A stretch of DNA of 64,000 nucleotides from Podarcis muralis (GCF_964188315.1 NC_135667.1:10416001-10480000), one strand, 5' to 3'; positions 12,776-57,545 are shown, counted from the first letter of the stretch. Notes: generated by a model not told the origin, from the sequence alone. Translations and numbers: made by a program.

Positions 12776-13561
12776 ATGACAGTGGAATTTGTGGTTCTGT
12801 TGGGTCTTAGAATACATGGACTTGCTGGCTGGTATCACTTTCTGAGTCCCTACTCCGGATATGTGTAGAGTTTGCTCCTTACCTTTTTCTTCTCCTGCAT
12901 TCCCATGGGTGTCCCACATTTCTGCTCAAAGGGCTCTGTTTTTTGTCGGCCAAAGATGTCCCAAAGGCAATGGGTAAATATTTTTCCTCAGGTTCTACTC
13001 CCAAAGCCTTTTTCACAAATGAGTAATGCTGTAAAGCAGTGGAGGTTTAGGTTCAAAGTTTCCTTCTCCTAGGTGGGCTCCCTTCTTAGGTTTACGAGAC
13101 CCATCTACCCCTCATTTCCCTCTTCAGCACCTTCAGTAGCCACCTCTTTAAGCATTGAGCCCACTTTTGCTCTCATCTGCTATATCCTGTCTTTGCGTGC
13201 AGAGAAATTCCCTAACTCACTGAGGATTTGAGGCCCATTGGCTGACCTCACCCTGGTTTAGGCAGTCAGTTGAATCTGTTTTGTGGGATGTGGCTGCTGT
13301 TTCAAGCTGACAAGTTCTAGGAGCCACAGGTGAGAACTGAGTGCAGGGTGGGGATCTGAGGTAGACAAACTACCCTAGAAGGAGCATGACGTGTTCCCCG
13401 CTAGAGTTACTACCCCTCCCTAACACTCCATACACCCCTGTCATGTATTACTGTATATTTAAAGCAAGTGGAATCTTAATAGCAAAACTCTCAGCCTTTT
13501 CATTTAGAAATGGTTAATTTCAGTGGTTCAATGTTGTACATATACTGTATGAATGATTGTT

Positions 13562-13567
13562 AATAAA
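13562..13567 (+). terminator. Probable polyadenylation signal of V2R-A
   Basis: First canonical AATAAA after the stop codon; same position in the gene B flank (25820-25825). Confidence 0.45.
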
Positions 13568-35496: not shown

Positions 35497-36126
35497 ATGA
35501 CAGTGGAATTTGTGGTTCTTTTGGGTCTGAGGCTGCATGGACTTGCTGGCTGGTATCACCTTCTGGGTCCATACTCCAGATATGTGTAGTGTTTGCTCCT
35601 TACCTTTTTCTTCTCCTGCATTCCCATGGGTGTCCCACATTTCTGCTCAAAGGGCTCTGTTTCTTTGTGCTATGCTCCACTCCTCCTTTCTTCCCACCCA
35701 GTGCAGCCCTGACCTCTGCTTGCCCTTCAGAGCCAGTGTGTCACATGGTACTGGGCCTTGGCTGCAGCCGCCTCTCATCCTTCTTGCCCACTCTCCAGCA
35801 GCTGCTACAATCTGCCCAAGGGAAGAGGATGGCAGTAGCGTCCATGGAGAGGCAATGGAATGCTCCCTCACAGCAGCTACAGCAGCTATTGTTCAGGACA
35901 AGCACCAACTCATTTTCCTCCCAAAGCTTCAGAGCAGCAGCCCTGGCAAAGGAAATAGATATATTCTAGGATCACATCAGAAGCCAGGATGGTTTTTTTT
36001 AAATTCTGGGACTGTCCCTGGAAAATCGGTACACTCAGAGGGTATGCGTATGGATGGAACAATATTCCTTCTCCCAATAAGTGCTCATAAGAACATCGTT
36101 GCAAAGGGAATAATTGGACACAGGGT

Positions 36127-36322
36127 GGTTGCATCATGGAATTGATTATTTTGTATAATTCCAAATCATCCATGTTTTAATGAGGGCCTCTTGAGTTTGC
36201 CATTAGCACCATTAACTCAAAACAACCCAGGTCTCACAGGCATAACTTCCCATCACTTGAGGAGTGCAATTTGACTAGAGAGCAGAGCGGAAAGGAGAAG
36301 TAGGAGATACACAGGGTATAAA
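36127..36322 (+). promoter_or_regulatory. Candidate OR1 promoter (homeodomain site, O/E-like site, TATA)
   Basis: Block ggttgcatcatgga...ttttaatgagggcctcttgagttt...attaactcaa shared with OR2 and OR3 upstream regions; TATAAA at 36317-36322. Confidence 0.55.
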
Positions 36323-37078
36323 TATGGGGGGTGAGAATGAGAGGGCAGGTCTTTAGGAGAAAGTCAATTTCCTGGTATTTTCCTTGCAAAGCTAGAGTTG
36401 CCATTTCCTTCAGGTGGGTCCTTCCTTTGAACCTGACCAGCTATTTCAGAAGAATACGTTAGTTCTTGATAACAAGGTAAAGCTTATTGTTGACAAAGTC
36501 GTATCTTCCTTAAAGCTGGGAAAGAGCATTTGGGGAGTGATCAGAGGGTAAAAGAATAGGATTCAAATGCTAAAGTATTTCAAGTAGGAATGTTATACTG
36601 ATGATGGATAAAATCATGCAGACTGCATTAAAAAAAACCTTTCTAGATTTATTCCCATTGTTGTCTGCACCGAGATCTTCAGCTGATGGGCCTTGTATGA
36701 TGTATAAAGATTTGTGTGATGTATAAAGATCCACAGGTGAATAATGGTTTCAAGACATGTGAATTCCCATACCTTAGAGTAGTAGAGGTTAGGAAAATGT
36801 ATTGATTTCAATCCAGAAACAGATTCTCTTCAGAGCAGCATGAAAACCAAGTGTATATAATCACTGTATTAAAGGGGTTGTTAGACTACAAGTGTCTTAA
36901 AATGACATTTCTCTATTTTTATCTCTAAACATTATCCTAAATAGTTCACTCTGGGAAACATCTCAGGATAAACTGGTCTGAGCTGACACATCCGGCCAAG
37001 AGATGCTGACTTGCTTGCCCTTCAATCTGTGACCATCAACGCCATATATTTTGTTCTCCCATGATGCGTACTGCCTGA

Positions 37079-38038
37079 ATGGCGTGTGGAAACGTAACAT
37101 CGGTCCTTGAACATTTTGAACTTCTAGGATTCCTGTACCCCAAAGACCTAAAGTCCATGTTGCTCTTCTTCTTCTTCTTCATGTACATATTGTGTCTTTC
37201 CGGAAATGGCTTGATCCTCTTAGTGGTAGGACTGGAACCCCACTTGCACAAGCCTATGTACTGGTTCCTCTGCCACCTGTCCATCATAGACATGATGGTC
37301 TCCTCAGTGGTAGTGCCCAAGTTGATTGTTTGGCTGATGGGAGGGAATGGGGCCATCTCCTTTGCAGGGTGTGTAGCCCAGCTCTTTTTCTTCCACTTCC
37401 TGGGCTGCACAGAATGCTTCCTGTACACTGTGATGGCCTTTGATCGCTTCCTGGCCATCTGCAAACCACTACACTACAGCACCATCATGAACCACCGTGT
37501 GTGCTTCTACCTTTCTGCTGGCACCGTGTTGGGAGGTGCTCTGCACTCTGCTCTAGAGACTTCCCTCACCTTCCATTTGCCATACGGACGGGGGAACCAG
37601 GTGAACTTCATTGTCTGCGACATCCCAGCTGTGCTGAAGCTGGCCTGCGTGGACACATCCCTCAATGAGATGGTGACTTTCATTGACGTGGGGTTGGTCG
37701 CCATGGCTTGCTTCCTCCTGATCCTGACATCTTACGTTTATATCATTTGTGCCATCCTGAGAATTCCCACTGCCAAGGGCAGACACCGTGCCTTTTCCAC
37801 TTGCACAGCCCATATCACCTTGGTGATGATCTATTACGTGCCTGTTGTTTACAACTACCTGAGGCCAGCGTCTCAGGAATCCTTTGACGGCATCATTGCC
37901 ATGTTTTATGCAGCAGTGACCCCCTTTTTAAACCCTCTCATATACACACTGAGGAACAATGAGATGAAAGTGGGTTTGAAGAAATTGTGCAGTACAAAAT
38001 GGCAGGGTCCTCACAAGTCGGTTCAAGCGTGGTGCTGA
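37079..38038 (+). CDS. Olfactory receptor, class II (OR10-family-like), OR1, 319 aa
   Basis: Single-exon 7TM with LHKPMYWFLCHLS, MAFDRFLAICKPLHY, RAFSTCTAH, PFLNPLIYTLRN. Confidence 0.96.
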   Translation: MACGNVTSVLEHFELLGFLYPKDLKSMLLFFFFFMYILCLSGNGLILLVVGLEPHLHKPMYWFLCHLSIIDMMVSSVVVPKLIVWLMGGNGAISFAGCVAQLFFFHFLGCTECFLYTVMAFDRFLAICKPLHYSTIMNHRVCFYLSAGTVLGGALHSALETSLTFHLPYGRGNQVNFIVCDIPAVLKLACVDTSLNEMVTFIDVGLVAMACFLLILTSYVYIICAILRIPTAKGRHRAFSTCTAHITLVMIYYVPVVYNYLRPASQESFDGIIAMFYAAVTPFLNPLIYTLRNNEMKVGLKKLCSTKWQGPHKSVQAWC

Positions 38039-38207
38039 TAATGTCAAGGTTGCAGGTTCGATCCTCATAAGGGACAGTTGCATATTGCTGTGTTGCAGAG
38101 TATTGGACAAGATGAGGGTTTCCCAAGCTTGCATCTCCAGCTGTTTTTGAACTTGCAGACCCATGTCTAGGAAACCCTGAACTAGTTGATCCTTTCCAAT
38201 TCTATGA
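38001..38207 (+). mobile_element. tRNA-Ile-derived SINE with CR1-like tail, overlapping the OR1 3' end; small palindromic insert at about 38116-38179
   Basis: gcgtggtgctgataatgtcaaggttgcaggttcgatcc matches the vertebrate tRNA-Ile core; B box at 38055-38064; ends ctttccaattctatgat. Confidence 0.7.
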
Positions 38208-38624
38208 TGGTTTTTAAGTAGGAGTTTTGCTGAAACCTGGAGGAAACAAATATTTCATGCCTTTTGGTTTGCTTTGTGTGTGTGTTTTTTTAAAATATTT
38301 ATTTATTTTTAAAGAACCATGCAGTCCAACTGTTGTGTAGATCTTGAGTGTTTATGAACATTTGATTTTCTGGTCATTGCAAGAGAAGACAGACACCATG
38401 GTGCACAACCTGAGCATCGAATACCCACCTCGCTCTATTGTAACCCTTTATGCCATTTACAATGTGTTGTGCACATGATAGGAAATAGCCATCCATGACC
38501 ACAAAGTCTCCTTTGGTTATACCACACATCTCTTCCTCTATCTGTGCACATGGATTCAAAATCCAATTTAGGTAGTAATTGTGCAGGTGGTACCTACCTA
38601 TGGTTGCTGGTTTTGTGTGTGCCC

Positions 38625-38870
38625 CATGTGGTCATCCAGTGAAATGCAGGGGGCAGTGAAGAACTTTCTGGACCGATACTGCCCACCCAGGCATCCCATT
38701 GGATCTTCTTTAACCAGTTCTTCTTCAGCTGTGATGTGTTTCTGTATTCTTGGTGGTTCTTTCATGTTGAAACCCTGGTTTCCCCTTCAGTCCTATCCAG
38801 CCCATGAGTTCTGGCCAATTACCTGTCTCGTAGCTCCTGGTTTCTCGCTGCTGTCTCACCCCAGACTTTT
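38625..38870 (+). repeat. Unclassified old dispersed repeat, copy 1
   Basis: Aligns with the reverse complements of 50321-50492 and 57300-57545 (gcagggggcagtgaagaactttctggac, ttcttcttcagct, ggccaat...gctcctggtttct). Confidence 0.7.
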
Positions 38871-39842
38871 GCACATAACCAAGCCTCTATGCCAAAACAA
38901 TTGTTTGCAAATGATTGTTCCCCAGTAGAGTTCCAAGCAACAATATCTTTTTAACTTTCAAATAAACAATAGTTTTAATAATACACACTGGACTCTGGTG
39001 AAACCACAGGGCATAAACATGTTCCCCAGATGTGCACATATCCCGAGAGAACAAGTAAGGAGGTTGCATGAAATTCAGAGAAGCTGCAACATTATAAAGA
39101 CACAGGGGGGAGATGAAATGGTCTGTCATGGTGGGAAATGTTCAGTTGATTATCTTCTACAGCTATCCTGTAGCCAACCTGTATTCCCCAGACTGGTTTT
39201 TCTTTCTTTCTGCATCTCAGAAGAAACATATATGAATAAAAGAAAATCTAATTTGTGTGCTCAGGACTTGCCTGGCCACAACACAACTGAAAGCAGTTAA
39301 GGTGTTCCTACGCCCTCTGTTTAATCTCCTTCAGAAGATCACACAGTTACTACTCTGAAGAGGGGAGTTCGTTTCAGAATCTCCTCTGCACACTCAACTA
39401 GCTGACGTTTGACTGAAGGTACGTCTGAGGCAAATAGCTAGGTAAAATATCCATGAGTCTCCTGAACAGAAACTAACTGCAATGATATAATAACAACTAA
39501 GCTTCAGCAAGCTTTGGCTAATGATGTCTTGATAAGTGATCGAATTATCCTATGATCCATCAGACATTCTAGCCATTCCTCAGGTAATTTTACCAGTGAT
39601 TTTATAGCACACCTATAATCTCATCAAAGAGGTCATTTGGCCAACGCCTATCAGGAAACTGGATTGAATAGCTCCCAAATGCATTTCTGGACGACGTTAA
39701 GGATTTAATAAGTAATAAAATAAAATAAGCTCAAAATAGTCTTTGGAGAATGAGATCATGGCAAAAACATCATGTGCATGAAATCCTGATATTAATGTAG
39801 TTTGGGATTATTTCTGAATATTGTGCACTGTTATTTCCCCCA

Positions 39843-40139
39843 GTTCGAATCCCCGCGGCGAGGTGCGCTCCCGTTGCTCAGTCCCAGCGCCTGCCAACCT
39901 AGCAGTTCGAAAGCACCCCCGGGTGCAAGTAGATAAATAGGGACCGCTTACTGGCGGGAAGGTAAACGGCGTTTCCGTGTGCAGCTCTGGCTCACCAGAT
40001 GCAGCTTGTCACGCTGGCCACGTGACCCGGAAGTGTCTCCGGACAGCGCTGGCCCCCGGCCTCTTAAGTGAGATGGGCGCACAACCCTAGAGTCTGTCAA
40101 GACTGGCCCGTACGGGCAGGGGTACCTTTACCTTTACCT
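39843..40139 (+). mobile_element. Sauria SINE, 5'-truncated at the B box
   Basis: ttcgaatccccgcggcg...gggcaggggtacctttacctttacc. Confidence 0.9.
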
Positions 40140-40348
40140 ATGATCCCACCTACCACAAAGTATCTTACGAACAGCAGCAGATCTTGCAGCCTCAAATTTC
40201 AGCAGCGCCCTTTGCAACCCCAAAATTCAGAGCCCCCCCCCCATTTCTCACACTCCATTCTAAAGCATAGTTGCAACACCCCCTACAGCACCCTTGAAGC
40301 TCCGTGTCCCGTGCAACCAAGCCAGTCACACTCCCCTAAATCTGCCTC

Positions 40349-40431
40349 TCTTACCAATGGAGTGTGCAAATGAAACAGCACCAACAGAGTTCGTCCTCTC
40401 AGGGTTCCAATACCCACCAGAAATGAAGGTC
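40349..40431 (+). pseudogene. 83-bp OR 5' fragment (MECANETAPTEFVLSGFQYPPEMKV)
   Basis: 82/83 identical to the reverse complement of 55260-55342 (start of OR4). Confidence 0.9.
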
Positions 40432-40570
40432 ATGTATTGGTTAGGGTGTTGGACTAACACTTGGGAAACCAGGTTCAAGTTCCCAGTCAGCTATGAAGCT
40501 CACTGGGTGACCTTGGCTCAGTCACCATCTCTCAGCCTAAGCAACCTCACAGGGTTGTTGAGAGGATAAA
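40432..40570 (+). mobile_element. Older CORE/MIR-like SINE
   Basis: ggttcaagttccc B-box-like, ctgggtgaccttggctcagtcacc...cctcacagggttgttgagaggataaa. Confidence 0.7.
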
Positions 40571-41255
40571 AGGGGGAGAAGAAGAGAATGTACTTCAGCT
40601 TGAACTCCTTGGTTGAAAGGTAGGATTGAAAAGCAAAAATAATTAAATGGTATATTAAAAAAAACTATGTGGCTGTACTTTGAAGAAGCCCACTTGCATT
40701 CCCTTCTGAATTTCTCAGGATGTCTGCCATGTTCTAGGGTGTTTTGTAGTTGAAATAACTTTTGCTTTTCTGCACAATTCCTTACCTGCCCCTAAGAAAG
40801 AAGTTTGGTCCTCCTGAAATATGTTTTAATTTAATATACATGTGTATAATTTTACTTACCTTGATTGTATAAGCATCCCCCTGGTGACTATCCACATTCT
40901 TGGGTTGAAAAACTATTTTATTTTATTTTATTTTAAAAGATTTTGCTTTTCTGTTACATTAATACTAACAAATAAAAAATAAATTGATATTTTTAGTAAA
41001 TATTTTGAGTCACACTTCTTCAGTAAAAAAATAAAGATTCGTTCATCATAAATCATAGTTCTCAGGATTAGACATATTTGCATTGATGCCAATGTTTTAT
41101 TCGTAGTGTATTGCTGAAGTGCACCATGTAATCTTTTCAGATACTAATTTTCTCTAATAAACTGTTTTGAAAAAGATATAAAGGGTTAAAATAAAGCATG
41201 GACTGGAAATGGGGTAGATAAAACACGAACATAAGAACATGTGGCTAACATCTCA

Positions 41256-41423
41256 AAATCCAACTTTGTCCGATTTACTCCAAAATTGGGCCAAAGTTTT
41301 ACAGCATTTTGCAGCTATTCAGTTTTGGGGGCTCTGCAAAACATGAAGTTTGCGCTGCAAATTCTGCAAAACAATTGCAAAACTTTGGCCCAGATTAGGA
41401 GTAAATTGAACAAGGTTGGATTT
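41256..41423. repeat. Imperfect inverted repeat (fold-back, MITE-like relic)
   Basis: Arms of about 58-63 bp: aaatccaactttgtccgatttactcc... versus ...ggagtaaattgaacaaggttggattt. Confidence 0.7.
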
Positions 41424-41732
41424 CAAGCACTGTTAATAAGGTACCCGAGTTTGATGTATCATTTACTCTGTTCTTTGGGAGGTTTGGAGGAAATTCCAAA
41501 TTTGGGGGTTCATAATTAACACAGCTTGTGCTCAGGCTTCTGGTGAAATATATTTGAGTAATGTACTGCCTGGATTGGCCACAGCTAGCATAAATATCAA
41601 AATCCTGGCCATGTGCATTTGCCTGATCAATGGGACAGTTCTTCTGCTTGCTGAACATCAGGTGCTAGGTCAAGTCATTAAACTCAGGAACTTAGGATTA
41701 GGGGACATAGTGGGAAGGGAGGTAAAGAGTGG

Positions 41733-41734
<2 letters not shown>

Positions 41735-41776
<42 letters not shown>
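41735..41776. repeat. (AC)21 microsatellite
   Basis: Direct reading. Confidence 0.95.
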
Positions 41777-41779
<3 letters not shown>

Positions 41780-41865
41780 CCCCATCACACCTTACATATA
41801 CCAACCACATAATGTATCCACCATCACCACTTATGCTGCCTAGTAAGTCACATAACTAAACACAA

Positions 41866-42038
41866 GGTTCCATTATGGAGTGATTCCCATGGTTCCCACA
41901 AATGAATCAACATTTTAATGAGGCCCTCTGGAGTTTCAGCTGTTATTAACTCAAGAGCACCCCAATGGCCAGGGCTTGGTAACCTAAGAGACACAAAATA
42001 AGAAGAGAGCAGAGAGGGAACAAAAAGAAGATTATAAA
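41866..42038 (+). promoter_or_regulatory. Candidate OR2 promoter (homeodomain site, O/E-like site, TATA)
   Basis: aacattttaatgaggccctctgga at 41909-41932; TATAAA at 42033-42038; paralogous to the OR1 and OR3 blocks. Confidence 0.6.
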
Positions 42039-42306
42039 GATGGGTGACCAGAACAAGAGGGGTAGATGCATAATACAAGAGCATATTAGGACTCTCTTGC
42101 CATTTATATCATGTGGCAATAAAAGACTGGCACATTAAAGGAGTTGTTAGACATAACTGAAATTTGCATCCACCCACTGATGGAAGATCTAGGTGAAAAC
42201 CAGCCTGAGCTGACACATCCCACCAAGAGATGCTGACTTTGGTTTTCCTTCCATTTGTGACCATTATCACCATCCGTTCTGTTCTGCTAAGATGAGTGCT
42301 GCCTAA

Positions 42307-43266
42307 ATGGATTGTGGAAATGTAACATCAGTGTTTGAACATTTTGAACTTGTGGGATTCATATATCCCAAAGAGCTAAAGTTCCCGTTGCTCACCTTCT
42401 TTTCCATTATGTATATATTATCTCTTTCTGGAAATGGCTTGATCCTTCTAGTGGTAGCCCTGGAACCTCATTTGCACAAGCCTATGTACTGGTTCCTCTG
42501 CCATCTGTCTGTGTTGGATATGATGATCTGCTCAGTGGTGGTGCCCAAGATGATTTTTTGGCTGATAGAGGGCAATGGGGTCATCTCCGTCACAGGTTGT
42601 GTGTCCCAGCTCTTCCTCTTTCACTTCCTGGGCTGCACAGAATGCTTCTTGTACACCGTGATGGCCTTTGATCGCTTCCTGGCCATCTGCAAACCACTCC
42701 ACTACGGCACCATCATGAACCATCAGATTTGCTTCAACTTCTCTATTGGCATCTGGTTTGGAGGCTGCCTGCACTCTGTGGTACATACCTACCTCACCTT
42801 CCATTTGCCATATGGACGGGGGAACCAGGTGAACTACACCTTCTGTGACATCCCAGCTGTGCTGAAGCTGGCCTGTGGAGACACATCCTTCCATGAGCTG
42901 GTGACTTTTGTTGACATTGGGATTGTGTCTTTGGTTTCCTTCCTCCTGATCCTCACATCCTACATGTATATCATTTGTGCCATCCTGAGGATTCCCACTG
43001 CCACAGGGAGACAACGTGCCTTCTCCACCTGCACAGCCCATATCACTTTGGTGGTGATATTCTATGTCCCTGTGGTTTACAACTACCTGCGTCCACCATC
43101 TCAGGAGTCCCTTGATGGGACCATTGCTGTGTTCTACACAGCGGTGACACCATTCTTAAACCCTCTCATATACACTCTGAGGAACAATGAGATGAAAGTT
43201 GGTGTGAAGAAATTGTGCAGTAGGAAACCACAGCACTCCCTTAACCATGTGAGATCATCTTCCTGA
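42307..43266 (+). CDS. Olfactory receptor, class II (OR10-family-like), OR2, 319 aa
   Basis: Intact 7TM with the same OR signature motifs as OR1. Confidence 0.96.
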   Translation: MDCGNVTSVFEHFELVGFIYPKELKFPLLTFFSIMYILSLSGNGLILLVVALEPHLHKPMYWFLCHLSVLDMMICSVVVPKMIFWLIEGNGVISVTGCVSQLFLFHFLGCTECFLYTVMAFDRFLAICKPLHYGTIMNHQICFNFSIGIWFGGCLHSVVHTYLTFHLPYGRGNQVNYTFCDIPAVLKLACGDTSFHELVTFVDIGIVSLVSFLLILTSYMYIICAILRIPTATGRQRAFSTCTAHITLVVIFYVPVVYNYLRPPSQESLDGTIAVFYTAVTPFLNPLIYTLRNNEMKVGVKKLCSRKPQHSLNHVRSSS

Positions 43267-44768
43267 AAACATTATATATTGAGAAATCCTTGCAGTCCAA
43301 CTGTTAAGTAGATATGGGTATTTTAGGAATAGCTAGAGACAACAAATAATCTGAACATGGAACATTTCCCTGATCTCTACTCTCTCCTTTTACCTGTTGT
43401 AAATAGAAATCTCAAACCTAAAAATATTCTTTGTCTAAACTATTCATCTGTTGGCTTTTTGTATTGTGAGAAGATGGAACTGGGGGAAATCTAATAGGAT
43501 CTAAGCAACTTCTGGTTCAGGATGAATCATCCCTAAGTGATTAGGATGAAAATATTTCTGACTGGTCCAAAGGTGGCTAGATAGAACTAAGCAATCAAAG
43601 TGCAATAGCACATAATAGCCCTGAGATCTATGGATGATGGGCAGTATATAAATTTAATTTTGTTGTTGTTGTTGTTGTTAACAACAACAACAACAGCTAT
43701 TGAAAGAGACCAATGAAATTTGAAGGGGAAACATACATGCCAGAGCCATTAAGAGAGAGAGAGAGAGAATCTGTTGGTCTTTATAAGTTAATGTTAAAAG
43801 CTTTTGAGCCAAAATGTGTCAGCTGGAGTGCCTGGTTGTCAATGAGAGCATAGATGCAGTGGAACTAATGGAAACCTGCTACAGTGGAGTAAACCACTGG
43901 GACCTGGTTATTTTCAAATACTAACTGTGAAGCAGGGGTAACCAATGGGGCATTCGCCATAAGTTGTTGGACTTCAATTCCCACTCCATTGTCTTTTGAG
44001 ACAACAACTCAAAACCACCACAACAGAAAATGTCGTGATAGGCACCATCATAGAGTGAATTTAAGGTTGTTCGTGGCTACTAGCCATGATGGTTTCATTG
44101 CCTCCAGTATCACAGGCAGAATGCCTTTGAAAGCAAGTCACTAGGGAATCACAGCTGGAGAGGCTGATGCTGTTTCTCAGCTGGTAACCGGAGGATTCAA
44201 TTGTACAAGATGCAGGGTGCTCCTTCCTAAGTATCTTCTGCCCTTGAAGTGAAAGGAATCACAGCATCTATTTCTTCCCCAGCATATTTCATGATTGAAT
44301 GCTTCATTTTAATGGCACTTGACTTCCTTTTAGTCTCCTCAAATGAATTGCCCTAGAGTGTTGCCATGTTGAAATCTTTGTGTCAATCATTCCAATATAC
44401 CACTCCTGGATCCAACCACAGTGACATCCATGTCCCACAGATTTCAGTGGAATATGTTTAACTCTCTCATGTTGAAACTAATTGGGTTGAAAAGTTTGAT
44501 TGATTGGGCCCAGTCTGGAGAGTCACTAACATATGCATGTAAATGTATATTTATATTTATATTTACTTATTTGGGGAATATCTAACTTGCTCTCTATTCA
44601 AGAGACTCATAAAGAGATGAGAGAAAATAGAAATCAAGTGCAATTTCAGAACATTGTACAAAGTACGGCCAAATATCAAACAATAGAATATCCAAACCTT
44701 GTATAAAATGCATATCAAACACAATACAAATAAAACCTTGAATCAATATATAATATTAAAATCAAATA

Positions 44769-45121
44769 CAGTGGTGCCCCGCAAGACGAATGCCTCGCAA
44801 GATGAAAAACCCGCTAGACGAAAGGGTTTTCCGTTTTTGAGTTGCTTCGCAATACGATTTTCCCTATGGGCTTGCTTCACAAGACGAAAACGTCTTGCGA
44901 GTCTTGCGATTTTTTTCGCTCCCCCCCCCTTTTTCTAAGCCGCTAAGCCGCTAATAGCCTTTTAGCCGCTAAGCCGCTAAGCCTTTAATAGCCGCTAAGC
45001 CGCTAAACCGCTAATAGCACTAATCCGCTAAGCCGCTAATAGGGTTGCTTCGCAAGACAAAAAAACCGCTAGACGAAGAGACTCACGGGACGGATTATTT
45101 TCATCTTGCGAGGCACCACTG
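44769..45121. mobile_element. Tc1/mariner-superfamily (Tigger/pogo-like) MITE
   Basis: TA|cagtggtgccccgcaag ... cttgcgaggcaccactg|TA; internal (gccgctaa)-type repeats. Confidence 0.88.
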
Positions 45122-45455
45122 TACAGCATAAAGGAATCTTAAATCAATATACAAAGTGTATAGAAAATAAATAAAAATGGGATACCAAACAGAACTCAAA
45201 GATGACGACAACCACCTCAAAACAGTATACAGAATAAAAATCAAATACAATACAAAATATCACTAACCAAATTTTTAAAAGTGGTAAATCAGTAAGAGAG
45301 AGAGGGAGATTTTCCTATACTATAGAGAAAAATGCAAGGCTATCATCACGTTTTAGTTTATGTGGCTGCCTATGCCAACCAAATGACAACAGGGTGGCAG
45401 CCACCCAGGTGAGCCATTTAATGGAGGAAAGTAGGGGCTAAGTACCCCTCCCCAC

Positions 45456-46333
45456 TGTGAAACATGGCTACAGCAAGGATTAATAGAGAGGAGAAGCATT
45501 TCACGAGTCACTCTGTGCAGTGCCTCTCCCAATTATATTAAACATGGCTGCAGAAACATCTAATGGAGGGAGCAGCTGCTTCAAAAAACCATTCTATGAA
45601 GCCCCTCCCTATTTCTTTTTCTTTCTTATTTTTGTAAGAGTGGGTGCTGTGGCAAGCTGTTAGGGGAGCTGTTTTGGGGTGAGCTGTGAGAAGAGGGGGA
45701 GGCATTTGGGGTGAGCTTGGAGAAGATAGGTGATGGGGCAGATGTGTTGTAGAGGGAGGAGGTTCGGTCAGCTCTAAAGGGACAAGGGGTTGGTGAGATG
45801 GTGGGAAGCAGGATGGCAAAACGGTTGGAGGGTAGGTGAGCAAAGCAAGCAAGGCCAGCGGCCCCTAGTGAGTGAGGACATTAAGTGCCAGTCAACAAAG
45901 AAGAGTGGGGTCCCTCCTCCAGCTGTGTGCTAGTGGGCAGAGACCAAAAAAGGGTTTAGGGTTTCAGTCTGCCTGATGTGGGTGGGAGAGGAAATCCCTT
46001 ACAGTCTTTTAGTGGAGACAAGGAAGAGGAAGGGGGCAAAGAGCATCCTGCAGGCTGACTGAGACAGGCTGAAACAAGGAGACCGAGAGCAGGGCTGGTT
46101 TGTCTGTTCTGAGACCAATGGGAGAAGCAAGAAACCCTCTTACAATGTGAATGCTCCACACTCTCTCCATCTAGACTCAGGTTGTTTATAAGTGTAAATA
46201 AACCAAATATCACAAAGACACTACAGTCTCCACTGTGCCTCATTGCCCAATCGGAAACACAGATTCTGGGTCAAGCACACCTGGAACCACTGGAACCTCG
46301 CACTGCTCATGGAGATTGGGGTGGTGTGTCACA
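45456..46333 (+). mobile_element. Probable solo LTR, 5' boundary uncertain
   Basis: Ends aaataaacc...ggtggtgtgtcaCA; purine-rich U3-like body; no matching TSD found. Confidence 0.4.
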
Positions 46334-46838
46334 ATATATATGCCCAGTATAATGACAATGCAATGCTATACTAGGGCCGACTGTGAGCCAATTCAAAGAG
46401 GACACAGGAATGGAAGGGAGAAGGGGAAGAGAGGAAAGGCCCAGCAATAGAGGGAAGAACAGCAGAGATGGTTGCCTAAGGATCCTTCAGATTTGAAGCC
46501 ATCCCTGTCTTTGACAGGTACTTATCATAAACTGGTACTTAGTTATAAGTTATTTAATTTTGATTAATTCAATCACTGCTGAGGGAAGGGGTTCATTTTA
46601 TGCCCTAATCATCTCTGCTTTGGTCAACAAGGTTGGAAAACAAATGGGAATGGAACAGTACTGTGGGCTGAACTATGTATTTTGCTGCTGAAGTTGACAA
46701 TGTTTACTGTGGATTAAATGATGTAGTTCTCCACTGCTCTTGGCAGCACTTGCCATGGCAGCTGGAGCTACAGTGGAGTGTTCAGATGGCTGCCTTGTTA
46801 CCTCCACTTTCCGCTGAGCAATAATGTGGAAAGTCAAA

Positions 46839-47343
46839 GTCAAGAAAAAGTTTAAAGACTATTTGCAAAAATATTGTAAATTGTATGAATGTTAAGAGGA
46901 TGCAGGATAGAAAACAATTTGGCATTAGTAAACTAAGCGGAAAGATATATGAAAATAAGCTAACTTTAAGAATAAGGTTGAAATTATGAATTAGCAGATG
47001 AAACTCAAATATCTAAATATTTGAAAACAAAGTTCAAAATTTGGAGATAAATTTTTTTGGAAAGTATATAATAAGATTTGAAAGAAGGTGAAGTACTACT
47101 GAATATAAATTTTATAAACGGGAACGCAGGAAAAGGAGATGTGAGGAAGTCCAAAAGGAAGGTTTATGGAAGATTGGTTCAATGAAAAGTAATAATGTTG
47201 TATTGTATCTGGTTTGTGTGTGGCTATTATTCTGTTTTTTCTTTTCTTTTCTCTTTTTTTCCTTATCTAAGTTGGTGATGGTGTTTTATATGTTTGGTAT
47301 GGTATTGTTAAAACCTTTAATAAAAATTTAAAAAAATAATAAT
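46839..47343 (+). mobile_element. L1 3' fragment
   Basis: 19-bp TSD aataatgtggaaagtcaaa (46820-46838, 47344-47362); ORF2-end-like EKFKDYLQKYCK; AATAAA plus A-rich tail. Confidence 0.8.
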
Positions 47344-47437
47344 AATAATGTGGAAAGTCAAATATGGATGGGTCAACAACCTTCCCTCCCAAGAAGTGTT
47401 CAAATGAATATAATTGTGATGTGCATAAATATTCAAA

Positions 47438-47630
47438 GGTTGCATCATGGAATGCTTCCTTGACGTTCCCCCAAAGGAAGTAACACTTTAATAAGGACTT
47501 CTGGGGTTTCAGCTCCTATCATCATTAACTCAAGATCATGCCATGCCACACAAGCTTATGTCCCACAACATCCAAAATGAGACGGCAGTGTGGGGATAAG
47601 GAAAAGAAAGCAATGCAGGTAGGGGATAAA
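47438..47630 (+). promoter_or_regulatory. Candidate OR3 promoter block
   Basis: ggttgcatcatgga...aacactttaataaggacttctggggtttcagc...attaactcaaga; gataaa at 47625-47630 in the TATA-equivalent position. Confidence 0.5.
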
Positions 47631-48632
47631 TATGAGTACCTGAGGACAGGTGTTCAGGAGGAAGCCAATTGCCTAGGCTCCTCTTCCCATTTATATCAGG
47701 TGGGTGCTTGCTTTGAACCCAGACAACTATATCAGAAGAATATGCCCAATATTTTTGATAACTCATTGCCAACAAAGCTATCTCTTACCCAAAAGCTGAT
47801 GAAGGGAATTTGAAGGAACCTTTATTTTAAGGAGGAGGGGGATGAGTAGGATGGGAAATCTTGTATGCCAACTGGGTACTAATGACTGATAAAATAATAC
47901 AGGCTGTATTTTGTTACAAGCTTTCTAGAGTCATGCACATGATGGTTATCACCAAAGATCTTCAGCTAACTGACCTTCTTTCCACTCCACTGAAACCCAC
48001 ATATCTGTTTTTCTATATGTTAGGTGAGATCTGGATAGACTGAGTTGTTTCATTTGTAGGAGTAAGAAGAGTAAAAGGCAGCACTTCTCTTGAAGATCCT
48101 CTGCTCTGTTCAATATATCAGCCATCAGCTGCTGCTCCAGAGGAAGGGGGATAAAATGATGTAATGAACAGTGATGGGTAAACTATCATCACAGGAGCAT
48201 TCCAGCTAACAACAGCCCATTCACAGCCTATGTTTCAAAATCAGGATGTTTCTGCTAATTTTGCTCTCAAGGACAAAATGAAAAAAAAATGTGTTGGGGG
48301 TCTGCTAAATAGCTGTCTCCTCCCTATATACCAGAGGTTTTATCCAATGTTAGTCATGTTCAAAGCAGATATATTGAAAATAATGTAAATGAATTTCAAG
48401 AGGTATAGTATGAGTAGAACTTGATTGGGTACATCCCTGTGTGTCTGAAATAATAATGTCTTACTGAGCATTTTGGTTCTTTCGGTTTCTGTTCAAGGAC
48501 TACTGGAGTGGAGGGAAAGGGTGTTATAGGGAGCTAGGATAGTGGCGTCTGAAGCAGAAGCAGGCAGAAGTTAGCTCTCTGGGTGATTGGCAGTAGATTG
48601 GCAAAGGTTTCAGAATAATAAGTATTGCCTGA

Positions 48633-49577
48633 ATGGAGTGTGGAAATGTAACATCAGTGCTTGAACATTTTGAACTTATGGGGTTTGCATATCCCAAAGA
48701 GCTAAAGATCCTGTTGCTCACCTTCTTCTTCCTCATGTATATATTGTCTCTTTTTGGAAACGGCTTGATCCTCTTGGTGGTTGCACTGGAACCTAGTTTG
48801 CACAAGCCTATGTACTGGTTCCTCTGCCATCTGTCCATCATAGATATGATGATCTGCTCAGTGGTGGTACCCAAGATGATTTCCTGGATGCTCAAGGGCA
48901 ATGGGGACATTTCCTTTACAGAATGTGCAACCCAGCTCTTCTTCTTCCACACCCTGGGCTGTTCAGAGTGCTTGCTGTACACTGTGATGGCCTTTGATCG
49001 CTTCCTGGCCATCTGCAAGCCACTCCACTACAGCACCATCATGAACCATCGTCTGGGCACCTGTCTTTCTGTTGGTGCCTGGTTTGGAGGCTGCCTGCAC
49101 TCTGTGGTAGAGACCTACCTCACCTTCCGTTTGCCATATGGACGAGGAAGTCAGGTGAACTACATCTTCTGTGACATCCCAGCTGTTCTGAAGCTGGCCT
49201 GTACTGACACATCCATCAATGAGATGGTGATTTCGGTTGACGTTGAAGTAGTGGCTGTTACCTGCTCCCTCCTGATCCTGACCTCCTATGTGTATATTAT
49301 TTCTGCCATCCTGAGGATTCCCACTGCCACAGGGAGACAACGTGCCTTCTCCACCTGTACAGCCCATATCACCTTGGTGGTTATCTATTATGTCCCTGTG
49401 GTTTACAACTACCTGCGTCCACCATCTCAGGACTCCCTTGATGGTATTGTTGCTGTGTTCTACACAGCATTGACCCCTCTCTTAAACCCTCTCATATACA
49501 CTCTGAGGAACAATGAGATGAAAGTTGGCGTAAAGAAATTGTGCAGTAGAAAACACAGTGCTCACTTAACTAACTGA
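48633..49577 (+). CDS. Olfactory receptor, class II (OR10-family-like), OR3, 314 aa
   Basis: Intact 7TM with OR signature motifs. Confidence 0.96.
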   Translation: MECGNVTSVLEHFELMGFAYPKELKILLLTFFFLMYILSLFGNGLILLVVALEPSLHKPMYWFLCHLSIIDMMICSVVVPKMISWMLKGNGDISFTECATQLFFFHTLGCSECLLYTVMAFDRFLAICKPLHYSTIMNHRLGTCLSVGAWFGGCLHSVVETYLTFRLPYGRGSQVNYIFCDIPAVLKLACTDTSINEMVISVDVEVVAVTCSLLILTSYVYIISAILRIPTATGRQRAFSTCTAHITLVVIYYVPVVYNYLRPPSQDSLDGIVAVFYTALTPLLNPLIYTLRNNEMKVGVKKLCSRKHSAHLTN

Positions 49578-50320
49578 GTTCTTGTTATTGCAATTAGTTT
49601 TATTGAAAATCAGAGAAAATAAACGAGCTTTTCTAAAACCTACTCTTGTGTTCCAACGGTTAAGAACATCTCCACTGTTTGCAAGCAGCTCTTGAGCATG
49701 GGATACTCACCTGAGCTCTACTGTCTTTTTTTCTGTCATTTGCAACCTGGTGCCTGCAAGATGAAGAGTAATGATCTGTAACCACAAATTCTCATTTGTT
49801 TGCACCACTCATCTGTTTCCATGCATGCATTTAAAGCTCAATTTATACAGTCCTTCTCCAGGCGACTGCTGCTTATCCATGGCTGCCTTCCAGACTGCAA
49901 CATAAATGTCTGAGGCTGCAGATCTAAACTCATTTACTACAGAGTACAGATGGGGAAGAATTTCTATTCACTTTGCATTTGAAGGCAAACTGAAGTTGTG
50001 CTTTCCTATAGAATAAACAGCAGTGTTAGGGGAGTGGTAGTACCTCTGGTGGGGGACATGTCATGCTCCTTCAAGGTAGTTTCTCCACTTTTGGCCCCCG
50101 CTCTGCACTCAGCTTTCACCTGTGGTTCCTAGAAGCTGTCAGAGTCCACACCCCAGGAAACGGCTTCAACTGGTTGGCTAAACCAGGTGAGGGGAGCCAA
50201 TGGGTCTCAAACCCTCATTGAGTTGTGATTCTTGTTAAGAACTCTCTGGGGAAACAATTATTTGCAAACAATGTTGTTTGTGGAAAGGCTGAGTTTTGGG
50301 CAGGGGTTTGGCAGGCCTCA

Positions 50321-50492
50321 GCAGCCAGAAACCAGGAGCTATGAGACGGGCTATTGGCCACAACTGAAAACCCAGCAGGACTGAAGGAGAGACACATCAG
50401 AGCTGAAGAAGAACAGGTTCAAGATGATCCAATGAGCAGCCAGTCCAGAAAGTTATTTGCTGCCCCCTGCAGCTCATTGGTTGAATACATGG
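50321..50492 (-). repeat. Unclassified old dispersed repeat, copy 2
   Basis: Homologous to 38625-38870. Confidence 0.6.
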
Positions 50493-50506
50493 AGTAGACA
50501 TATATA

Positions 50507-50812
50507 CAGTGGTGCCCCGCAAGACGAATGCCTTGCAAGACGAAAAACTCGCTAGACGAAAGGGTTTTTCCGTTTTTTGAGTCGTTCCGCAAGACGAATT
50601 TCCCTATGGGCTTGCTTCGCAAGACGAAATGTCTTGCGAGTTCTTGCGAGTTTGTTTCCTTTTTCTTAAAGCCGCTAAGCCGTTAATAGCCACTAAGCCG
50701 CTAATAGCCGCTAAGCCGCTAAGCCGCTAATAGCCGTGCTTCGCAAGACGAAAAAACCGCAAGACAAAGAGACTCGCGGAACGGATTAATTTCGTCTTGC
50801 GAGGCACCACTG
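50507..50812. mobile_element. Tc1/mariner-superfamily MITE, same family as 44769-45121
   Basis: TA|cagtggtgccccgcaagacgaa ... ttcgtcttgcgaggcaccactg|TA. Confidence 0.88.
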
Positions 50813-54407: not shown

Positions 54408-55334
54408 TTACATGGCAATCCCACCCCACCTTTTCACCACAGCAGTCTTCATTTCCTTATTTCTAAGTGTATATATGAGCGGGTTCAAAAATGGGGTTAT
54501 TGTGGTGTAGAACACACAAACCACAGGATCCATGGAGTCCTGAGAAGCTGGCCTCAGGTAGTGATAAACCACAGGTAGGTAATATATTCCCACCACAGTA
54601 AGATGGGCTGTGCAGGTTGAGAAGGCCCGTCGACGCCCTTCCCTGCTGCTGATCCTCAAAATTGCTGAGATAATGTAGACATAGGAGGTCAATATAAGGA
54701 GGAAGCAAGTCATTGCCACACTGCCAATATCTATCAACACCATCATCTGATTGAACTCTGTATCAGCACAAGCCAGCTTCAACATTGCAGGGATGTCACA
54801 TAAGATATAGTCAACATCATTTCTTTGCCCATATGGCAAACGGAAGGTGAGGGTTGTCTGTATAATTGAGTTCAAACAGCCTCCAATCACTGTCCCCACA
54901 GAGAGGCCAAGGCAGGCTTTCCAATTCATGATGTTGCTGTAATGGAGAGGCTTACAAATGGCCAAGAAGCGATCATAAGCCATCAAGGTGTAAAGGAGAC
55001 TTTCTGCACATCCGAGGAAGTTGAAGAAAAACAACTGAGAGATGCAACTTGTGAAGGAGATGACCTTTCCACCAGGGATGAATCCTGCAATCACTTTGGG
55101 GACGATGACAGAAGAGAAAGCCATGTCCAGGATGGACAGATGGCAGAGGAACCAGTACATGGGCTTGTGCAACTGGAGGTCAGAAGCCACCACCCAGAGA
55201 ATGAGGGAATTTCCAGACAGGGTCAGCAGGAACATGAGCAAGAAGAAGAGAAACAATGGGACCTTCATTTCTGGTGGGTATTGGAAACCTGAGAGGACGA
55301 ACTCTGTTGGTGCTGTTTCATTTGCACACTCCAT
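54408..55334 (-). CDS. Olfactory receptor, class II (OR10-family-like), OR4, 308 aa
   Basis: Starts MECANET at ATG 55334 (N-glycosylation sequon NET); LHKPMYWFLCHLS, MAYDRFLAIC, RAFSTC, PFLNPLIYTLRN. Confidence 0.95.
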   Translation of the reverse strand: MECANETAPTEFVLSGFQYPPEMKVPLFLFFLLMFLLTLSGNSLILWVVASDLQLHKPMYWFLCHLSILDMAFSSVIVPKVIAGFIPGGKVISFTSCISQLFFFNFLGCAESLLYTLMAYDRFLAICKPLHYSNIMNWKACLGLSVGTVIGGCLNSIIQTTLTFRLPYGQRNDVDYILCDIPAMLKLACADTEFNQMMVLIDIGSVAMTCFLLILTSYVYIISAILRISSREGRRRAFSTCTAHLTVVGIYYLPVVYHYLRPASQDSMDPVVCVFYTTITPFLNPLIYTLRNKEMKTAVVKRWGGIAM

Positions 55335-57299: not shown

Positions 57300-57545
57300 C
57301 AAGAGTCTGGGGTGAGACAGCAGCTAGAAACCAGGACCTATATGAAACAGGTCATTGGCCTGAACTGATGAGCTGGAGAGGACAGTAGATTAAACCAGGG
57401 CTCAGCATGAAAGAACCACCAAAGAATCATGAGAGCTGAAGAAGACCTGGTTAAACAAAACCCAAAGGGAAGCCTGGGTGGGCAGTATCAGTCCAGAAAG
57501 TTCTTCACTGCCACCTGCAGTTCATTGGTTGACCACAGGTGGCAG
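57300..57545 (-). repeat. Unclassified old dispersed repeat, copy 3
   Basis: Homologous to 38625-38870. Confidence 0.7.

What the first reader, a model, noticed from the sequence alone, without database searches (positions are those of the whole stretch)
36127..47630. Conserved homeodomain + O/E-like promoter block upstream of three ORs, resembling the mammalian H/P-element core
Seen: a roughly 95-bp block recurs at 36127-36220, 41866-41956 and 47438-47535 (about 0.9, 0.4 and 1.1 kb before each ATG), each followed by a TATA-like box about 110-135 bp past the TAAT core. The OR2 copy has AACATTTTAATGA (41909-41921), 12/13 identical to the 13-mer AACTTTTTAATGA that I recall from the mouse H and P elements; OR1 and OR3 copies match 10/13. 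TTTAATGAGGCCCTCTGGA (41914-41932) fits 17/19 of the Lhx2-Ebf composite consensus as I recall it (reverse of TYCCYWGGGVCTHATTARM). Inference: the mammalian OR gene-choice motif grammar operates in squamate proximal promoters, with graded motif quality predicting different choice frequencies (OR2 highest).
Basis: partly seen in the sequence, partly recalled or inferred. Interest (0 to 1): 0.75.

Follow-up and report, generated by a model that had tools for sequence, protein, structure and literature searches.

The report
Conserved lizard smell-receptor gene promoter
Three neighbouring wall-lizard smell-receptor genes share an old promoter module, with a homeodomain site abutting an O/E-like site about 130 bases before a TATA box, that also occurs in other lizards, geckos, a turtle and an alligator; it is the reptile version of a promoter type already known from mice, and its activity could not be tested here.

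Summary
The ~95-bp block sits at the stated coordinates upstream of three tandem OR10G6-like OR genes in a Podarcis window. It is the 5' third of a ~300-bp module: box A, an HD + O/E-like composite, ATTAACTCAA, a TATA box and a short non-coding exon ending CAG|GT.

The module lies upstream of related ORs in Rhineura, Elgaria, Hemicordylus and three geckos. A recognisable form lies upstream of sister-clade genes in alligator and turtle. A profile built from alligator and turtle alone recovers the squamate modules (E = 4e-5 and 5e-4). It is not a TE: there are no stray copies.

The recalled 13-mer is confirmed in the literature. The composite fits a published pattern and the register of a tested mouse composite.

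Three cautions apply.
- The motif matches alone are at chance level.
- Among the three paralogs, and within squamates generally, the boxes are no better conserved than 4-fold degenerate sites (0.72). Excess conservation appears only at squamate-archelosaur depth, and as absence of indels in the core.
- The available RNA runs gave no reads on OR2 or the OR3 promoter, so the TSS, expression and the predicted choice-frequency ranking are untested.

Verdict: a probable OR proximal promoter of the known HD + O/E kind in a new taxon. The one notable feature is an enhancer-type composite spacing inside a promoter.

The parts
36107..36421 (+). OR1 promoter module (box A through end of putative non-coding exon 1)
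   Evidence: nhmmer profile hit, E = 3e-66; alignments A2 and A3
36129..36141 (+). OR1 box A, TTGCATCATGGAA
   Evidence: TTGC...TGGAA nearly invariant in 10 copies
36171..36194 (+). OR1 extended HD 13-mer (36171-36183, 10/13) plus 17-nt HD/O-E composite (36178-36194, 15/17 of the published pattern)
36211..36220 (+). OR1 ATTAACTCAA box
36317..36323 (+). OR1 TATA box, TATAAAT, 139 nt after the TAAT
36411..36416 (+). OR1 putative exon-1 end and splice donor, CAG|GTG
   Evidence: conserved ...TATCAG|GTGGGT in A2; no RNA confirmation
37079..38038 (+). OR1 coding exon (OR10G6-like, 319 aa)
41851..42116 (+). OR2 promoter module
   Evidence: nhmmer E = 4e-52; 98.6% identical to P. raffonei L001:7534-7819
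41868..41880 (+). OR2 box A, degraded (TTCCATTATGGAG)
41909..41932 (+). OR2 extended HD 13-mer (41909-41921, 12/13) plus composite TAATGAGGCCCTCTGGA (41916-41932; 17/17 of the published pattern; TAATKR and YYYCARRRR both met)
41945..41954 (+). OR2 ATTAACTCAA box
42033..42039 (+). OR2 TATA box, TATAAAG, 117 nt after the TAAT
42110..42115 (+). OR2 position homologous to the exon-1 donor, altered to CAT|GTG; most of the intron is deleted in this copy
42307..43266 (+). OR2 coding exon (319 aa; 98% identical to P. raffonei OR10G6-like)
47436..47708 (+). OR3 promoter module
   Evidence: nhmmer E = 6e-59; 78% over 225 bp to Rhineura
47440..47452 (+). OR3 box A, TTGCATCATGGAA
47482..47505 (+). OR3 extended HD (10/13) plus composite TAATAAGGACTTCTGGG (47489-47505; pattern 17/17, but TAATAA fails TAATKR and the O/E half is 3/8)
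47524..47533 (+). OR3 ATTAACTCAA box
47625..47631 (+). OR3 weakened TATA-like box, GATAAAT, 136 nt after the TAAT
47697..47702 (+). OR3 putative exon-1 end and donor, CAG|GTG
48633..49577 (+). OR3 coding exon (314 aa)

Best explanation
The block is the upstream part of the proximal promoter of a squamate subfamily of class II, OR10G6-like olfactory receptor genes. It was copied along with each gene at tandem duplication. The full module is about 300 bp and runs in this order: box A (TTGCAyCATGGAA); CCAAA; a homeodomain site (TTTTAATGAG) abutting an O/E-like half site (GCCyTCTGGA) in a fixed register; ATTAACTCAA; a TATA box 117-171 nt after the TAAT; an initiator-like TCAGAAC; and a short non-coding exon 1 ending ...TATCAG|GT. 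A 0.1-3 kb intron would join that exon to the single coding exon. The mechanism is inferred by analogy with mouse. An Lhx2-type LIM-homeodomain protein and an Ebf (O/E) protein would bind the juxtaposed sites about 150-170 bp upstream of the start site. With TBP at the TATA box they would make the promoter competent for stochastic activation in olfactory neurons. Shown here: the sequence architecture, its position and orientation relative to the genes, and its conservation. Inferred: the start site, the splicing, the binding factors, and any role in gene choice.
For: 1. The module always lies 0.4-3 kb upstream of a clade-A OR on the same strand, and never elsewhere in about 270 kb of window plus loci. 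2. It is present in Podarcis (3 copies), P. raffonei, Rhineura, Elgaria, Hemicordylus, Eublepharis, Gekko (2 copies) and Sphaerodactylus. 3. The same order of elements is present upstream of sister-clade genes in alligator and turtle. A profile built only from those two finds the Rhineura module (E = 4e-5), Podarcis OR1 (E = 5e-4) and Eublepharis (E = 0.04). 4. At squamate-archelosaur depth the 24-nt core is 73% identical against 49-53% at 4-fold sites; 0 of 5000 resamples reach it. 5. No indel occurs in the 24 core columns, against 164 of 306 other module columns, so the HD-O/E spacing is fixed. 6. TAATGAG|GCCCTCTGGA has the same register as the EMSA-tested Sfaktiria composite TAATTGA|TCTCCAAGGA, where a 2-bp insertion impaired competition. 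It also fits the pattern published in PMC11643329. 7. The layout matches mouse OR promoters. There, 78% have a conserved O/E site within 200 bp of the TSS, HD sites are enriched, about 39% have a TATA box, and the TSS lies 0.2-24 kb from the ATG. HD and O/E sites are functionally required in the M71 promoter. 8. TATAAAG is the best conserved box (0.86), and TCAGAAC lies 30 nt after it in geckos, Hemicordylus and alligator.
Against: No expression evidence: four RNA runs of the species gave zero reads on OR2 or the OR3 promoter, and their tissue is unknown. The TSS, exon 1 and intron are therefore predictions. Within squamates the boxes (0.70-0.86 identity) are not significantly better conserved than 4-fold degenerate sites (0.72; P = 0.07-0.68). 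Other non-coding pieces of the locus also align across species. The motif matches are at chance level as single-sequence events. The O/E half is weak (3-7 of 8), and 5 of 14 copies fail TAATKR or YYYCARRRR. Both clade-A genes of Tiliqua lack any recognisable module within 4-5 kb, with no assembly gaps, so the module is dispensable or replaceable. The deep-conservation P value refers to a site that was found by searching; the unbiased figures are the nhmmer E-values.
Confidence: 0.62

Rival explanations
1. It is the promoter, but the conserved boxes are read by factors other than Lhx2 and Ebf, for example other homeodomain proteins such as Emx2, a C/EBP-ATF-type factor on box A, or an unknown factor on ATTAACTCAA. 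In that case the resemblance to the Lhx2-Ebf composite is coincidental.
For: The O/E half matches TCCCNNGGGA at only 3-7 of 8 positions. The degenerate composite pattern occurs once per 723 nt of strand. Box A and ATTAACTCAA are as well conserved as the composite (0.78-0.79) and have no assigned factor. In lacertoids box A reads TTGCATCA, a C/EBP-ATF-like sequence (my own knowledge), though not in geckos. Emx2 also binds OR homeodomain sites.
Against: The TAAT and CTGG positions are the invariant ones across 11 sequences including alligator and turtle. The spacing is fixed and equals that of a tested mouse composite. Composite Ebf halves are reported to be degenerate by nature.
Confidence: 0.15
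2. It is a neutral relic: duplicated upstream DNA that still aligns because squamate substitution rates are slow, with no present regulatory function for the block itself.
For: Among the paralogs the block (71-74%) is no better conserved than intron or 3' flank patches (70-71%) or third codon positions (73%). Within squamates the boxes do not exceed 4-fold sites. With Rhineura, many intergenic patches align at 70-77%. Tiliqua lacks the module.
Against: The core is retained at squamate-archelosaur depth, where 4-fold sites are down to 0.49-0.53. The reciprocal profile hits are significant. The pattern is one of conserved islands without indels separated by indel-rich spacers. The conserved islands coincide with a TATA box and an exon-intron boundary.
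Confidence: 0.12
3. It is a promoter-embedded enhancer of the Greek Island, H or P type. The composite would recruit Lhx2, Ebf and Ldb1 stably in most olfactory neurons and would act on neighbouring ORs of the cluster as well as on its own gene.
For: Composite spacing is identical to a tested Greek Island composite. A second HD-like box and further O/E-like stretches lie within 80 bp. [quoted passage not shown]
Against: It sits directly before a TATA box at every copy, one per gene, which is how promoters are distributed. Composite-like matches are common by chance. No accessibility or binding data exist.
Confidence: 0.08
4. It is a fragment of a transposable element that happens to lie upstream of the three genes.
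For: It recurs three times in 12 kb. The region holds real dispersed repeats, for example at 44765-45123 and 40433-40648.
Against: Profile searches found no copy away from an OR 5' region, always in the same orientation, at orthologous positions in 8 other squamate genomes plus alligator and turtle. There were no reads from other genomic copies in the RNA runs, unlike the true repeat at 44765-45123.
Confidence: 0.02

Closest known systems
Mouse class II OR proximal promoters (M71/Olfr151, MOR23, P3; genome-wide sets of Young 2011, Clowney 2011 and Plessy 2012)
   Same: HD and O/E-like sites lie within about 200 bp upstream of the inferred start. A TATA box is present, as in a subset of mouse OR promoters. 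A non-coding upstream exon is separated by an intron of 0.1-3 kb from a single coding exon. The promoter is conserved among orthologs and subfamily paralogs. The extended HD 13-mer is also present in the mouse P3 promoter.
   Different: The taxon is Squamata, with traces in turtle and alligator. The HD and O/E halves directly abut in the enhancer-type composite register, which mouse work reports as depleted from or 'not found in' promoters. The start site and expression are unverified.
Greek Island composite motif (Lhx2-Ebf; Monahan et al. 2017, PMC5608512; Pulupa et al., PMC11643329)
   Same: A TAAT-type site and a degenerate pyrimidine/purine Ebf half lie at the same fixed distance. It fits WWAHDRRBHHHHNDRDD and aligns in register with the Sfaktiria EMSA probe.
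   Different: The location is promoter-proximal, not intergenic. There is one composite per element, whereas Lipsi, for example, has four. No binding, accessibility or hub data exist. The HOMER score could not be computed.
Mouse H and P elements and the multimerised 21-mer 'gene choice enhancer' (ACATAACTTTTTAATGAGTCT)
   Same: They share the extended homeodomain sequence. OR2 matches 12/13, and geckos keep 12 contiguous bases, CTTTTTAATGAG.
   Different: H and P are enhancers acting on several genes at a distance. The match in the window is at chance level on its own. Nothing outside the HD site is similar.
Mammalian J element (class I OR enhancer conserved from platypus to human)
   Same: It is an OR regulatory sequence with HD sites, an O/E-like site and a composite, recognised by deep conservation using an nhmmer profile.
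   Different: J is a single long-range enhancer for a 3-Mb class I cluster. The module here is per-gene, proximal, and belongs to class II family-10 genes.

Membership tests
Vertebrate OR proximal promoter of the HD + O/E type | Homeodomain site (TAATKR as defined in PMC5638857) close upstream of the start site | tested here: met
   Met in OR1 and OR2 (TAATGA). OR3 has TAATAA, which fails K. 9 of 14 copies across species meet it.
Vertebrate OR proximal promoter of the HD + O/E type | O/E-like site (YYYCARRRR) within about 200 bp of the start site | tested here: met
   Met on the minus strand in OR2 (CTCCAGAGG) and OR3 (CCCCAGAAG); OR1 is 8/9. 9 of 14 copies meet it. The distance to the start is inferred from the TATA box only.
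Vertebrate OR proximal promoter of the HD + O/E type | Transcription start just downstream (a TATA box at -60 to -10 in a subset of promoters) | tested here: inconclusive
   A conserved TATAAAG is present, but the RNA runs gave no reads on the genes.
Vertebrate OR proximal promoter of the HD + O/E type | Non-coding 5' exon spliced to the single coding exon | tested here: inconclusive
   A conserved ...TATCAG|GTGGGT is present and putative exon 1 of OR1 and OR3 has no ATG. No spliced reads were obtained. Geckos lack a GT at that position.
Vertebrate OR proximal promoter of the HD + O/E type | Cross-species conservation peaking at the promoter | tested here: met
   The excess over 4-fold sites appears only at squamate-archelosaur depth.
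Vertebrate OR proximal promoter of the HD + O/E type | Sparse, singular expression in olfactory sensory neurons | not testable with these tools
   No olfactory-tissue RNA data were reachable.
Greek Island, H or P-type OR enhancer | Lhx2-Ebf composite motif with stereotyped spacing | tested here: met
   The published pattern is met 17/17 in OR2 and OR3 and 15/17 in OR1. The register equals the Sfaktiria probe, and no indels occur in 14 copies. The pattern alone is not specific: 177 hits per 64 kb.
Greek Island, H or P-type OR enhancer | Intergenic position, acting at a distance on several ORs | tested here: not met
   There is one copy per gene, 117-139 nt before that gene's TATA box. Action at a distance was not testable.
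Greek Island, H or P-type OR enhancer | Co-binding of Lhx2, Ebf and Ldb1, with accessibility in most olfactory neurons | not testable with these tools
   No ChIP or ATAC data for this species.
Greek Island, H or P-type OR enhancer | Extended homeodomain 13-mer AACTTTTTAATGA (H, P and J elements) | tested here: inconclusive
   12/13 in OR2 and 10/13 in OR1 and OR3. A 12/13 match is expected 0.4 times per window. Geckos keep 11 of the 13 bases contiguously.
Transposable element fragment | Dispersed copies unrelated to gene position and orientation | tested here: not met
   All significant profile hits lie 5' of ORs on the gene strand. A whole-genome copy count was not possible.

The most novel reading that the evidence does not exclude
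An enhancer-type Lhx2-Ebf composite, with the same fixed spacing that defines mouse Greek Islands and is reported absent from mouse OR promoters, has been kept inside the proximal promoter of an OR lineage since before squamates split from turtles and crocodilians. That would suggest promoter-embedded composites are an ancestral, self-sufficient mode of OR activation, and that distant OR enhancers may derive from such promoters.
Probability: 0.1. Interest if true: 0.7.

Novelty: new member of a known kind. Interest (0 to 1): 0.38.

Why it matters
OR gene choice has been dissected almost entirely in mouse. A defined, deeply conserved reptile OR promoter gives a compact substrate of about 300 bp, with natural variants in three adjacent paralogs and a dozen orthologs. 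It could be used to test whether the Lhx2/Ebf grammar and its spacing rule are general to amniotes, and whether a composite inside a promoter behaves differently from one in an enhancer. It also carries a methodological warning. In squamates, 70-75% identity in a short non-coding box is what near-neutral sites show, so paralog or within-squamate alignments cannot by themselves demonstrate constraint.

Tried and rejected
1. RNA evidence. The look-up of sequencing runs found no indexed RNA holder. Laying four raw RNA runs on 41800-47799 gave reads only on a dispersed repeat at about 44765-45123. Nothing can be said about the TSS, splicing or relative expression of OR1-3.

2. Motif statistics. 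The 13-mer match, the published composite pattern, and a stricter TAAT + 3 + O/E test were all at or near chance. HD plus adjacent O/E-like pairs number 5 against 1.7 expected in the window, and only one of the five lies in the block.

3. Constraint within squamates. Resampling of 4-fold sites showed no significant excess for any box. I therefore dropped the claim that within-squamate identity proves selection.

4. TE hypothesis. Rejected on copy distribution.

5. Structured RNA. Rfam finds nothing in 35500-50600.

6. Generality of the grammar. The neighbouring clade-C promoter (OR4) has a composite-like site at 57252 (-), but its TAAT cores are not kept in the P. raffonei paralog, so I did not claim a cluster-wide rule.

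7. Exact look-up of the OR2 protein found no record. The species was identified only to genus, Podarcis, from the 98% hit to P. raffonei.

9. I used the published fuzznuc pattern instead.

Full report
**What is in the window.** The window has no N and is 43.6% G+C.
- Up to about 36 kb it carries exons of three V2R-type genes (ANF_receptor and 7tm_3 domains).
- Next come three tandem olfactory receptor genes on the + strand: OR1 37079-38038, OR2 42307-43266 and OR3 48633-49577.
- A fourth, OR4, lies on the - strand at 54408-55328. All four match Pfam 7tm_4 at E = 1e-47 to 1e-52.
- The best protein hit of OR2 is 'olfactory receptor 10G6-like' of Podarcis raffonei at 98% identity. Relatives at 70-84% occur in Rhineura, Elgaria, Hemicordylus, Tiliqua and geckos. 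The genome is therefore a wall lizard, genus Podarcis.

**The observation.**
- The TAAT cores are at 36178, 41916 and 47489, which is 901, 391 and 1144 bp before the ATGs.
- TATA-like boxes follow at 139, 117 and 136 nt.
- The 13-mer matches are 12/13 for OR2 and 10/13 for OR1 and OR3.
- The recurrence is far beyond chance (2 hits against 0.00 expected; profile E = 1e-52 to 1e-66).
- The block is only part of a longer homology.

**The recalled motifs.**
[quoted passage not shown] It is the core of the 21-mer ACATAACTTTTTAATGAGTCT used as a multimerised gene-choice enhancer.
- The Monahan supplement gives the EMSA-tested Sfaktiria composite, which on one strand reads ...CTTTTTAATTGATCTCCAAGGAAT.
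- OR2 (TAATGAGGCCCTCTGGA) and OR3 fit the pattern 17/17, and OR1 fits 15/17.
- In register, TAATGAG|GCCCTCTGGA aligns with TAATTGA|TCTCCAAGGA.
- By the field's simpler definitions (HD = TAATKR, O/E-like = YYYCARRRR), OR2 meets both. OR1 meets HD only. OR3 meets O/E-like only.

**Are the motif matches meaningful in themselves? No.**
- A 12/13 match to the 13-mer is expected 0.40 times per window, and 35% of shuffles have one.
- The published composite pattern matches 177 times in the window, once per 723 nt of strand.
- TAAT + 3 nt + an O/E half at 6/8 or better occurs 3 times against 2.2 expected.
- The O/E halves of the window copies match TCCCNNGGGA at only 4, 6 and 3 of 8 positions.
- Any case for function has to come from position and conservation.

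**Anatomy of the module.** I fetched the loci of relatives and found the block at the corresponding upstream position in these species:
- Rhineura (L006:7410-7693)
- Elgaria (L002:6780-7105)
- Hemicordylus (L005:6177-6489)
- Eublepharis (L003:6633-6956)
- Gekko (L008:6411-6736 and 13567-13852)
- Sphaerodactylus (L007:4963-5290)
- P. raffonei (L001:7545-7810 and 13473-13748)

The ten-sequence alignment A2 shows a module of about 300 bp in this order:
- box A (TTGCAyCATGGAA);
- CCAAA;
- TTTTAATGAGGCCyTCTGGA;
- ATTAACTCAA;
- a GTCTCATGAG stretch;
- GAGAGCAGAG;
- TATAAAG;
- ATCAGAACCAGAGGG, whose A lies 30 nt after the TATA box in geckos and Hemicordylus;
- about 60-90 nt ending in ...CCATTTATATCAG|GTGGGT.

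The distance from the core to the ATG varies from 0.4 to 3 kb. That is what a variable intron between a non-coding exon 1 and the coding exon would give. Putative exon 1 of OR1 and OR3 has no ATG. OR2 and Rhineura have lost most of the intron, and OR2 reads CAT|GTG at the donor position. Geckos keep CTTTTTAATGAG, 12 contiguous bases of the mouse 21-mer.

**Is it a TE? No.** In about 270 kb of window plus loci, every significant profile hit lies 5' of an OR on the gene's strand. The RNA runs showed many mismatched reads from other copies on a true dispersed repeat at 44765-45123, but none on the block.

**How strong is the conservation?** This needed care.
- A gene tree places all block-bearing genes in one squamate clade, A. 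A sister clade B holds Lacerta 312-aa genes, one Sphaerodactylus gene, alligator and turtle. A third clade C holds OR4 and the 308-aa genes.
- Among the three Podarcis paralogs the block is 71-74% identical. Intron and 3' flank patches are 70-71% and third codon positions are 73%.
- Across nine clade-A genes the boxes are 0.70-0.86 identical, but 4-fold degenerate sites of the same genes are 0.72. Resampling gives P = 0.07 for TATA and 0.15-0.68 for the other boxes.
- Other non-coding pieces also align between species: 3' UTR segments, an intronic element, and many intergenic patches with Rhineura.
- Within squamates, therefore, identity alone does not prove constraint. What stands out there is the pattern of gap-free islands separated by indel-rich spacers at 0.25-0.47.

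**The deeper comparison.** This one is informative.
- The clade-A profile gave a weak hit 417 bp upstream of the alligator clade-B gene (E = 0.004) and a very weak hit upstream of the turtle gene.
- Reading them and aligning them (A3) shows the same order of elements: CCCAAA; TAATGAATCCCACTGGAGTTT in alligator and TAATAATGCCCACTGGAGTTT in turtle; CATCAyT; GAGAAGAGAG; GGTTATAAG at 144 and 171 nt; and TCAGAGC about 30 nt after that.
- The reverse test is not circular. A profile built only from alligator and turtle recovers the Rhineura module (E = 4e-5, spanning the composite to the TATA box), Podarcis OR1 (E = 5e-4) and Eublepharis (E = 0.04).
- At this depth 4-fold sites are 0.49-0.53 identical while the 24-nt core is 0.73; 0 of 5000 resamples reach it. 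The site was found by searching, so the nhmmer E-values are the fairer figures.
- None of the 24 core columns has a gap in 11 sequences, against 164 of 306 other module columns (Fisher P = 5e-8). This is partly circular, because the alignment anchors on the core.
- The HD-to-O/E spacing has therefore stayed fixed in every copy. By my own knowledge of divergence times that covers roughly 190-200 My within squamates and about 270-280 My to archelosaurs.
- Counter-evidence: both clade-A genes of Tiliqua lack any recognisable module within 4-5 kb of gap-free sequence. Lacerta clade-B genes also gave no significant hit.

**Expression.** No indexed RNA run holds the region. Four raw RNA runs of the same species, three bulk and one single-cell, gave zero reads across OR2 and the OR3 promoter. 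Their tissue is not given and is evidently not olfactory. The start site, the splice and the relative expression of OR1-3 remain untested.

**Comparison with what is known.**
- In mouse, 78% of OR promoters have a conserved O/E site within 200 bp of the TSS, and HD sites are enriched.
- About 39% have a TATA box at -60 to -10.
- TSSs lie 0.2-24 kb from the ATG because of upstream non-coding exons.
- Conservation rises toward the TSS (PMC3247239).
- HD and O/E sites are required for the M71 promoter, and about 300 bp of promoter can drive OR-like expression (PMC12547500).

The lizard module has all the sequence features of this class, so the architecture is a known kind in a new taxon. I found no paper on OR promoters in lizards.

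One feature departs from the mouse picture. The HD and O/E halves abut in the Greek Island composite register, whereas composites are described as enriched in enhancers and depleted from or 'not found in' OR promoters. Given how degenerate the pattern is, this is suggestive only.

OR2 does carry the ancestral-looking core, identical to the alignment consensus, and a canonical TATAAAG. However, it has three changes in box A and an altered donor. OR1 and OR3 keep box A and the donor, but have 2 and 5 changes in the core, and OR3 has a weakened TATA box. No ranking can be derived without expression data.

**Verdict.** The block is real and is most likely the upstream half of the proximal promoter of a squamate OR10G6-like subfamily. 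It is inherited through gene duplications, and its core predates the squamate-archelosaur split. Binding of Lhx2-type and Ebf-type factors is inferred by analogy. It is a new member of a known kind, of moderate interest, with a testable twist: composite spacing inside a promoter.

Noticed in passing
window 38614-39490 (+) and 40363-40431 (+): A truncated clade-C OR lies between OR1 and OR2. A promoter plus exon-1 copy is 74% identical over 833 bp to OR4's upstream region. It is followed by only the first 23 codons of the CDS, 100% identical to OR4's N-terminus, and then by repeat DNA at 40433-40648. The orthologous gene is intact in P. raffonei (L001:5033-5959, 308 aa).
   Followed up: partly
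window 36597-36686 and 47871-48020 (introns of OR1 and OR3); L002:7304-7426; L008:7161-7228: A second conserved non-coding element sits inside the putative 5' intron. It is shared by Podarcis OR1 and OR3, Elgaria and Gekko, with an invariant core ATCTTCAGCTGA that contains a CAGCTG E-box. It is deleted in OR2 and Rhineura. It could be an intronic regulatory element or an alternative exon.
   Followed up: partly
window 56680-57345 (-), upstream of OR4: OR4 has its own conserved promoter: ATTATAAAG at about 57083, exon 1 ending CAG|GTGAGT at about 56716, and a composite-like TAATTATTCCCCAGTGG at 57252. The TATA box and the O/E-like TTCCCCAG are kept in the P. raffonei paralog (L001:3807-4404), but both TAAT cores are not.
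   Followed up: partly
window 50246-50508 (-): An orphan fragment of the clade-C promoter (69-73% to OR4's upstream region) includes TTGCAAATAATTGTTTCCCCAGAG. It lies just past the 3' end of OR3, and no OR coding sequence follows it.
   Followed up: partly
window 44765-45123: A dispersed repeat. RNA reads from all four runs pile up here at 95-99% identity with many variant positions and loose ends, so they come from other genomic copies embedded in transcripts.
   Followed up: no
L001:184-1050 (P. raffonei) against window 36697-36706: P. raffonei carries an insertion of about 865 bp in the OR1 5' intron relative to the window genome. As a result its OR1 promoter block lies outside the fetched locus.
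   Followed up: partly
L004 (Tiliqua scincoides), 3092-8001 and 8963-12920: Both clade-A OR genes of the skink Tiliqua lack any recognisable copy of the promoter module in gap-free upstream sequence. This indicates promoter turnover or a much longer intron in this lineage.
   Followed up: partly
window 36129-36137 and 47440-47448: In lacertoids and Hemicordylus, box A reads (G)TTGCATCA, which resembles a C/EBP-ATF composite response element (my own recollection). Geckos read ATTGCAC(C/T)T instead, so the resemblance may be lineage-specific or coincidental.
   Followed up: no
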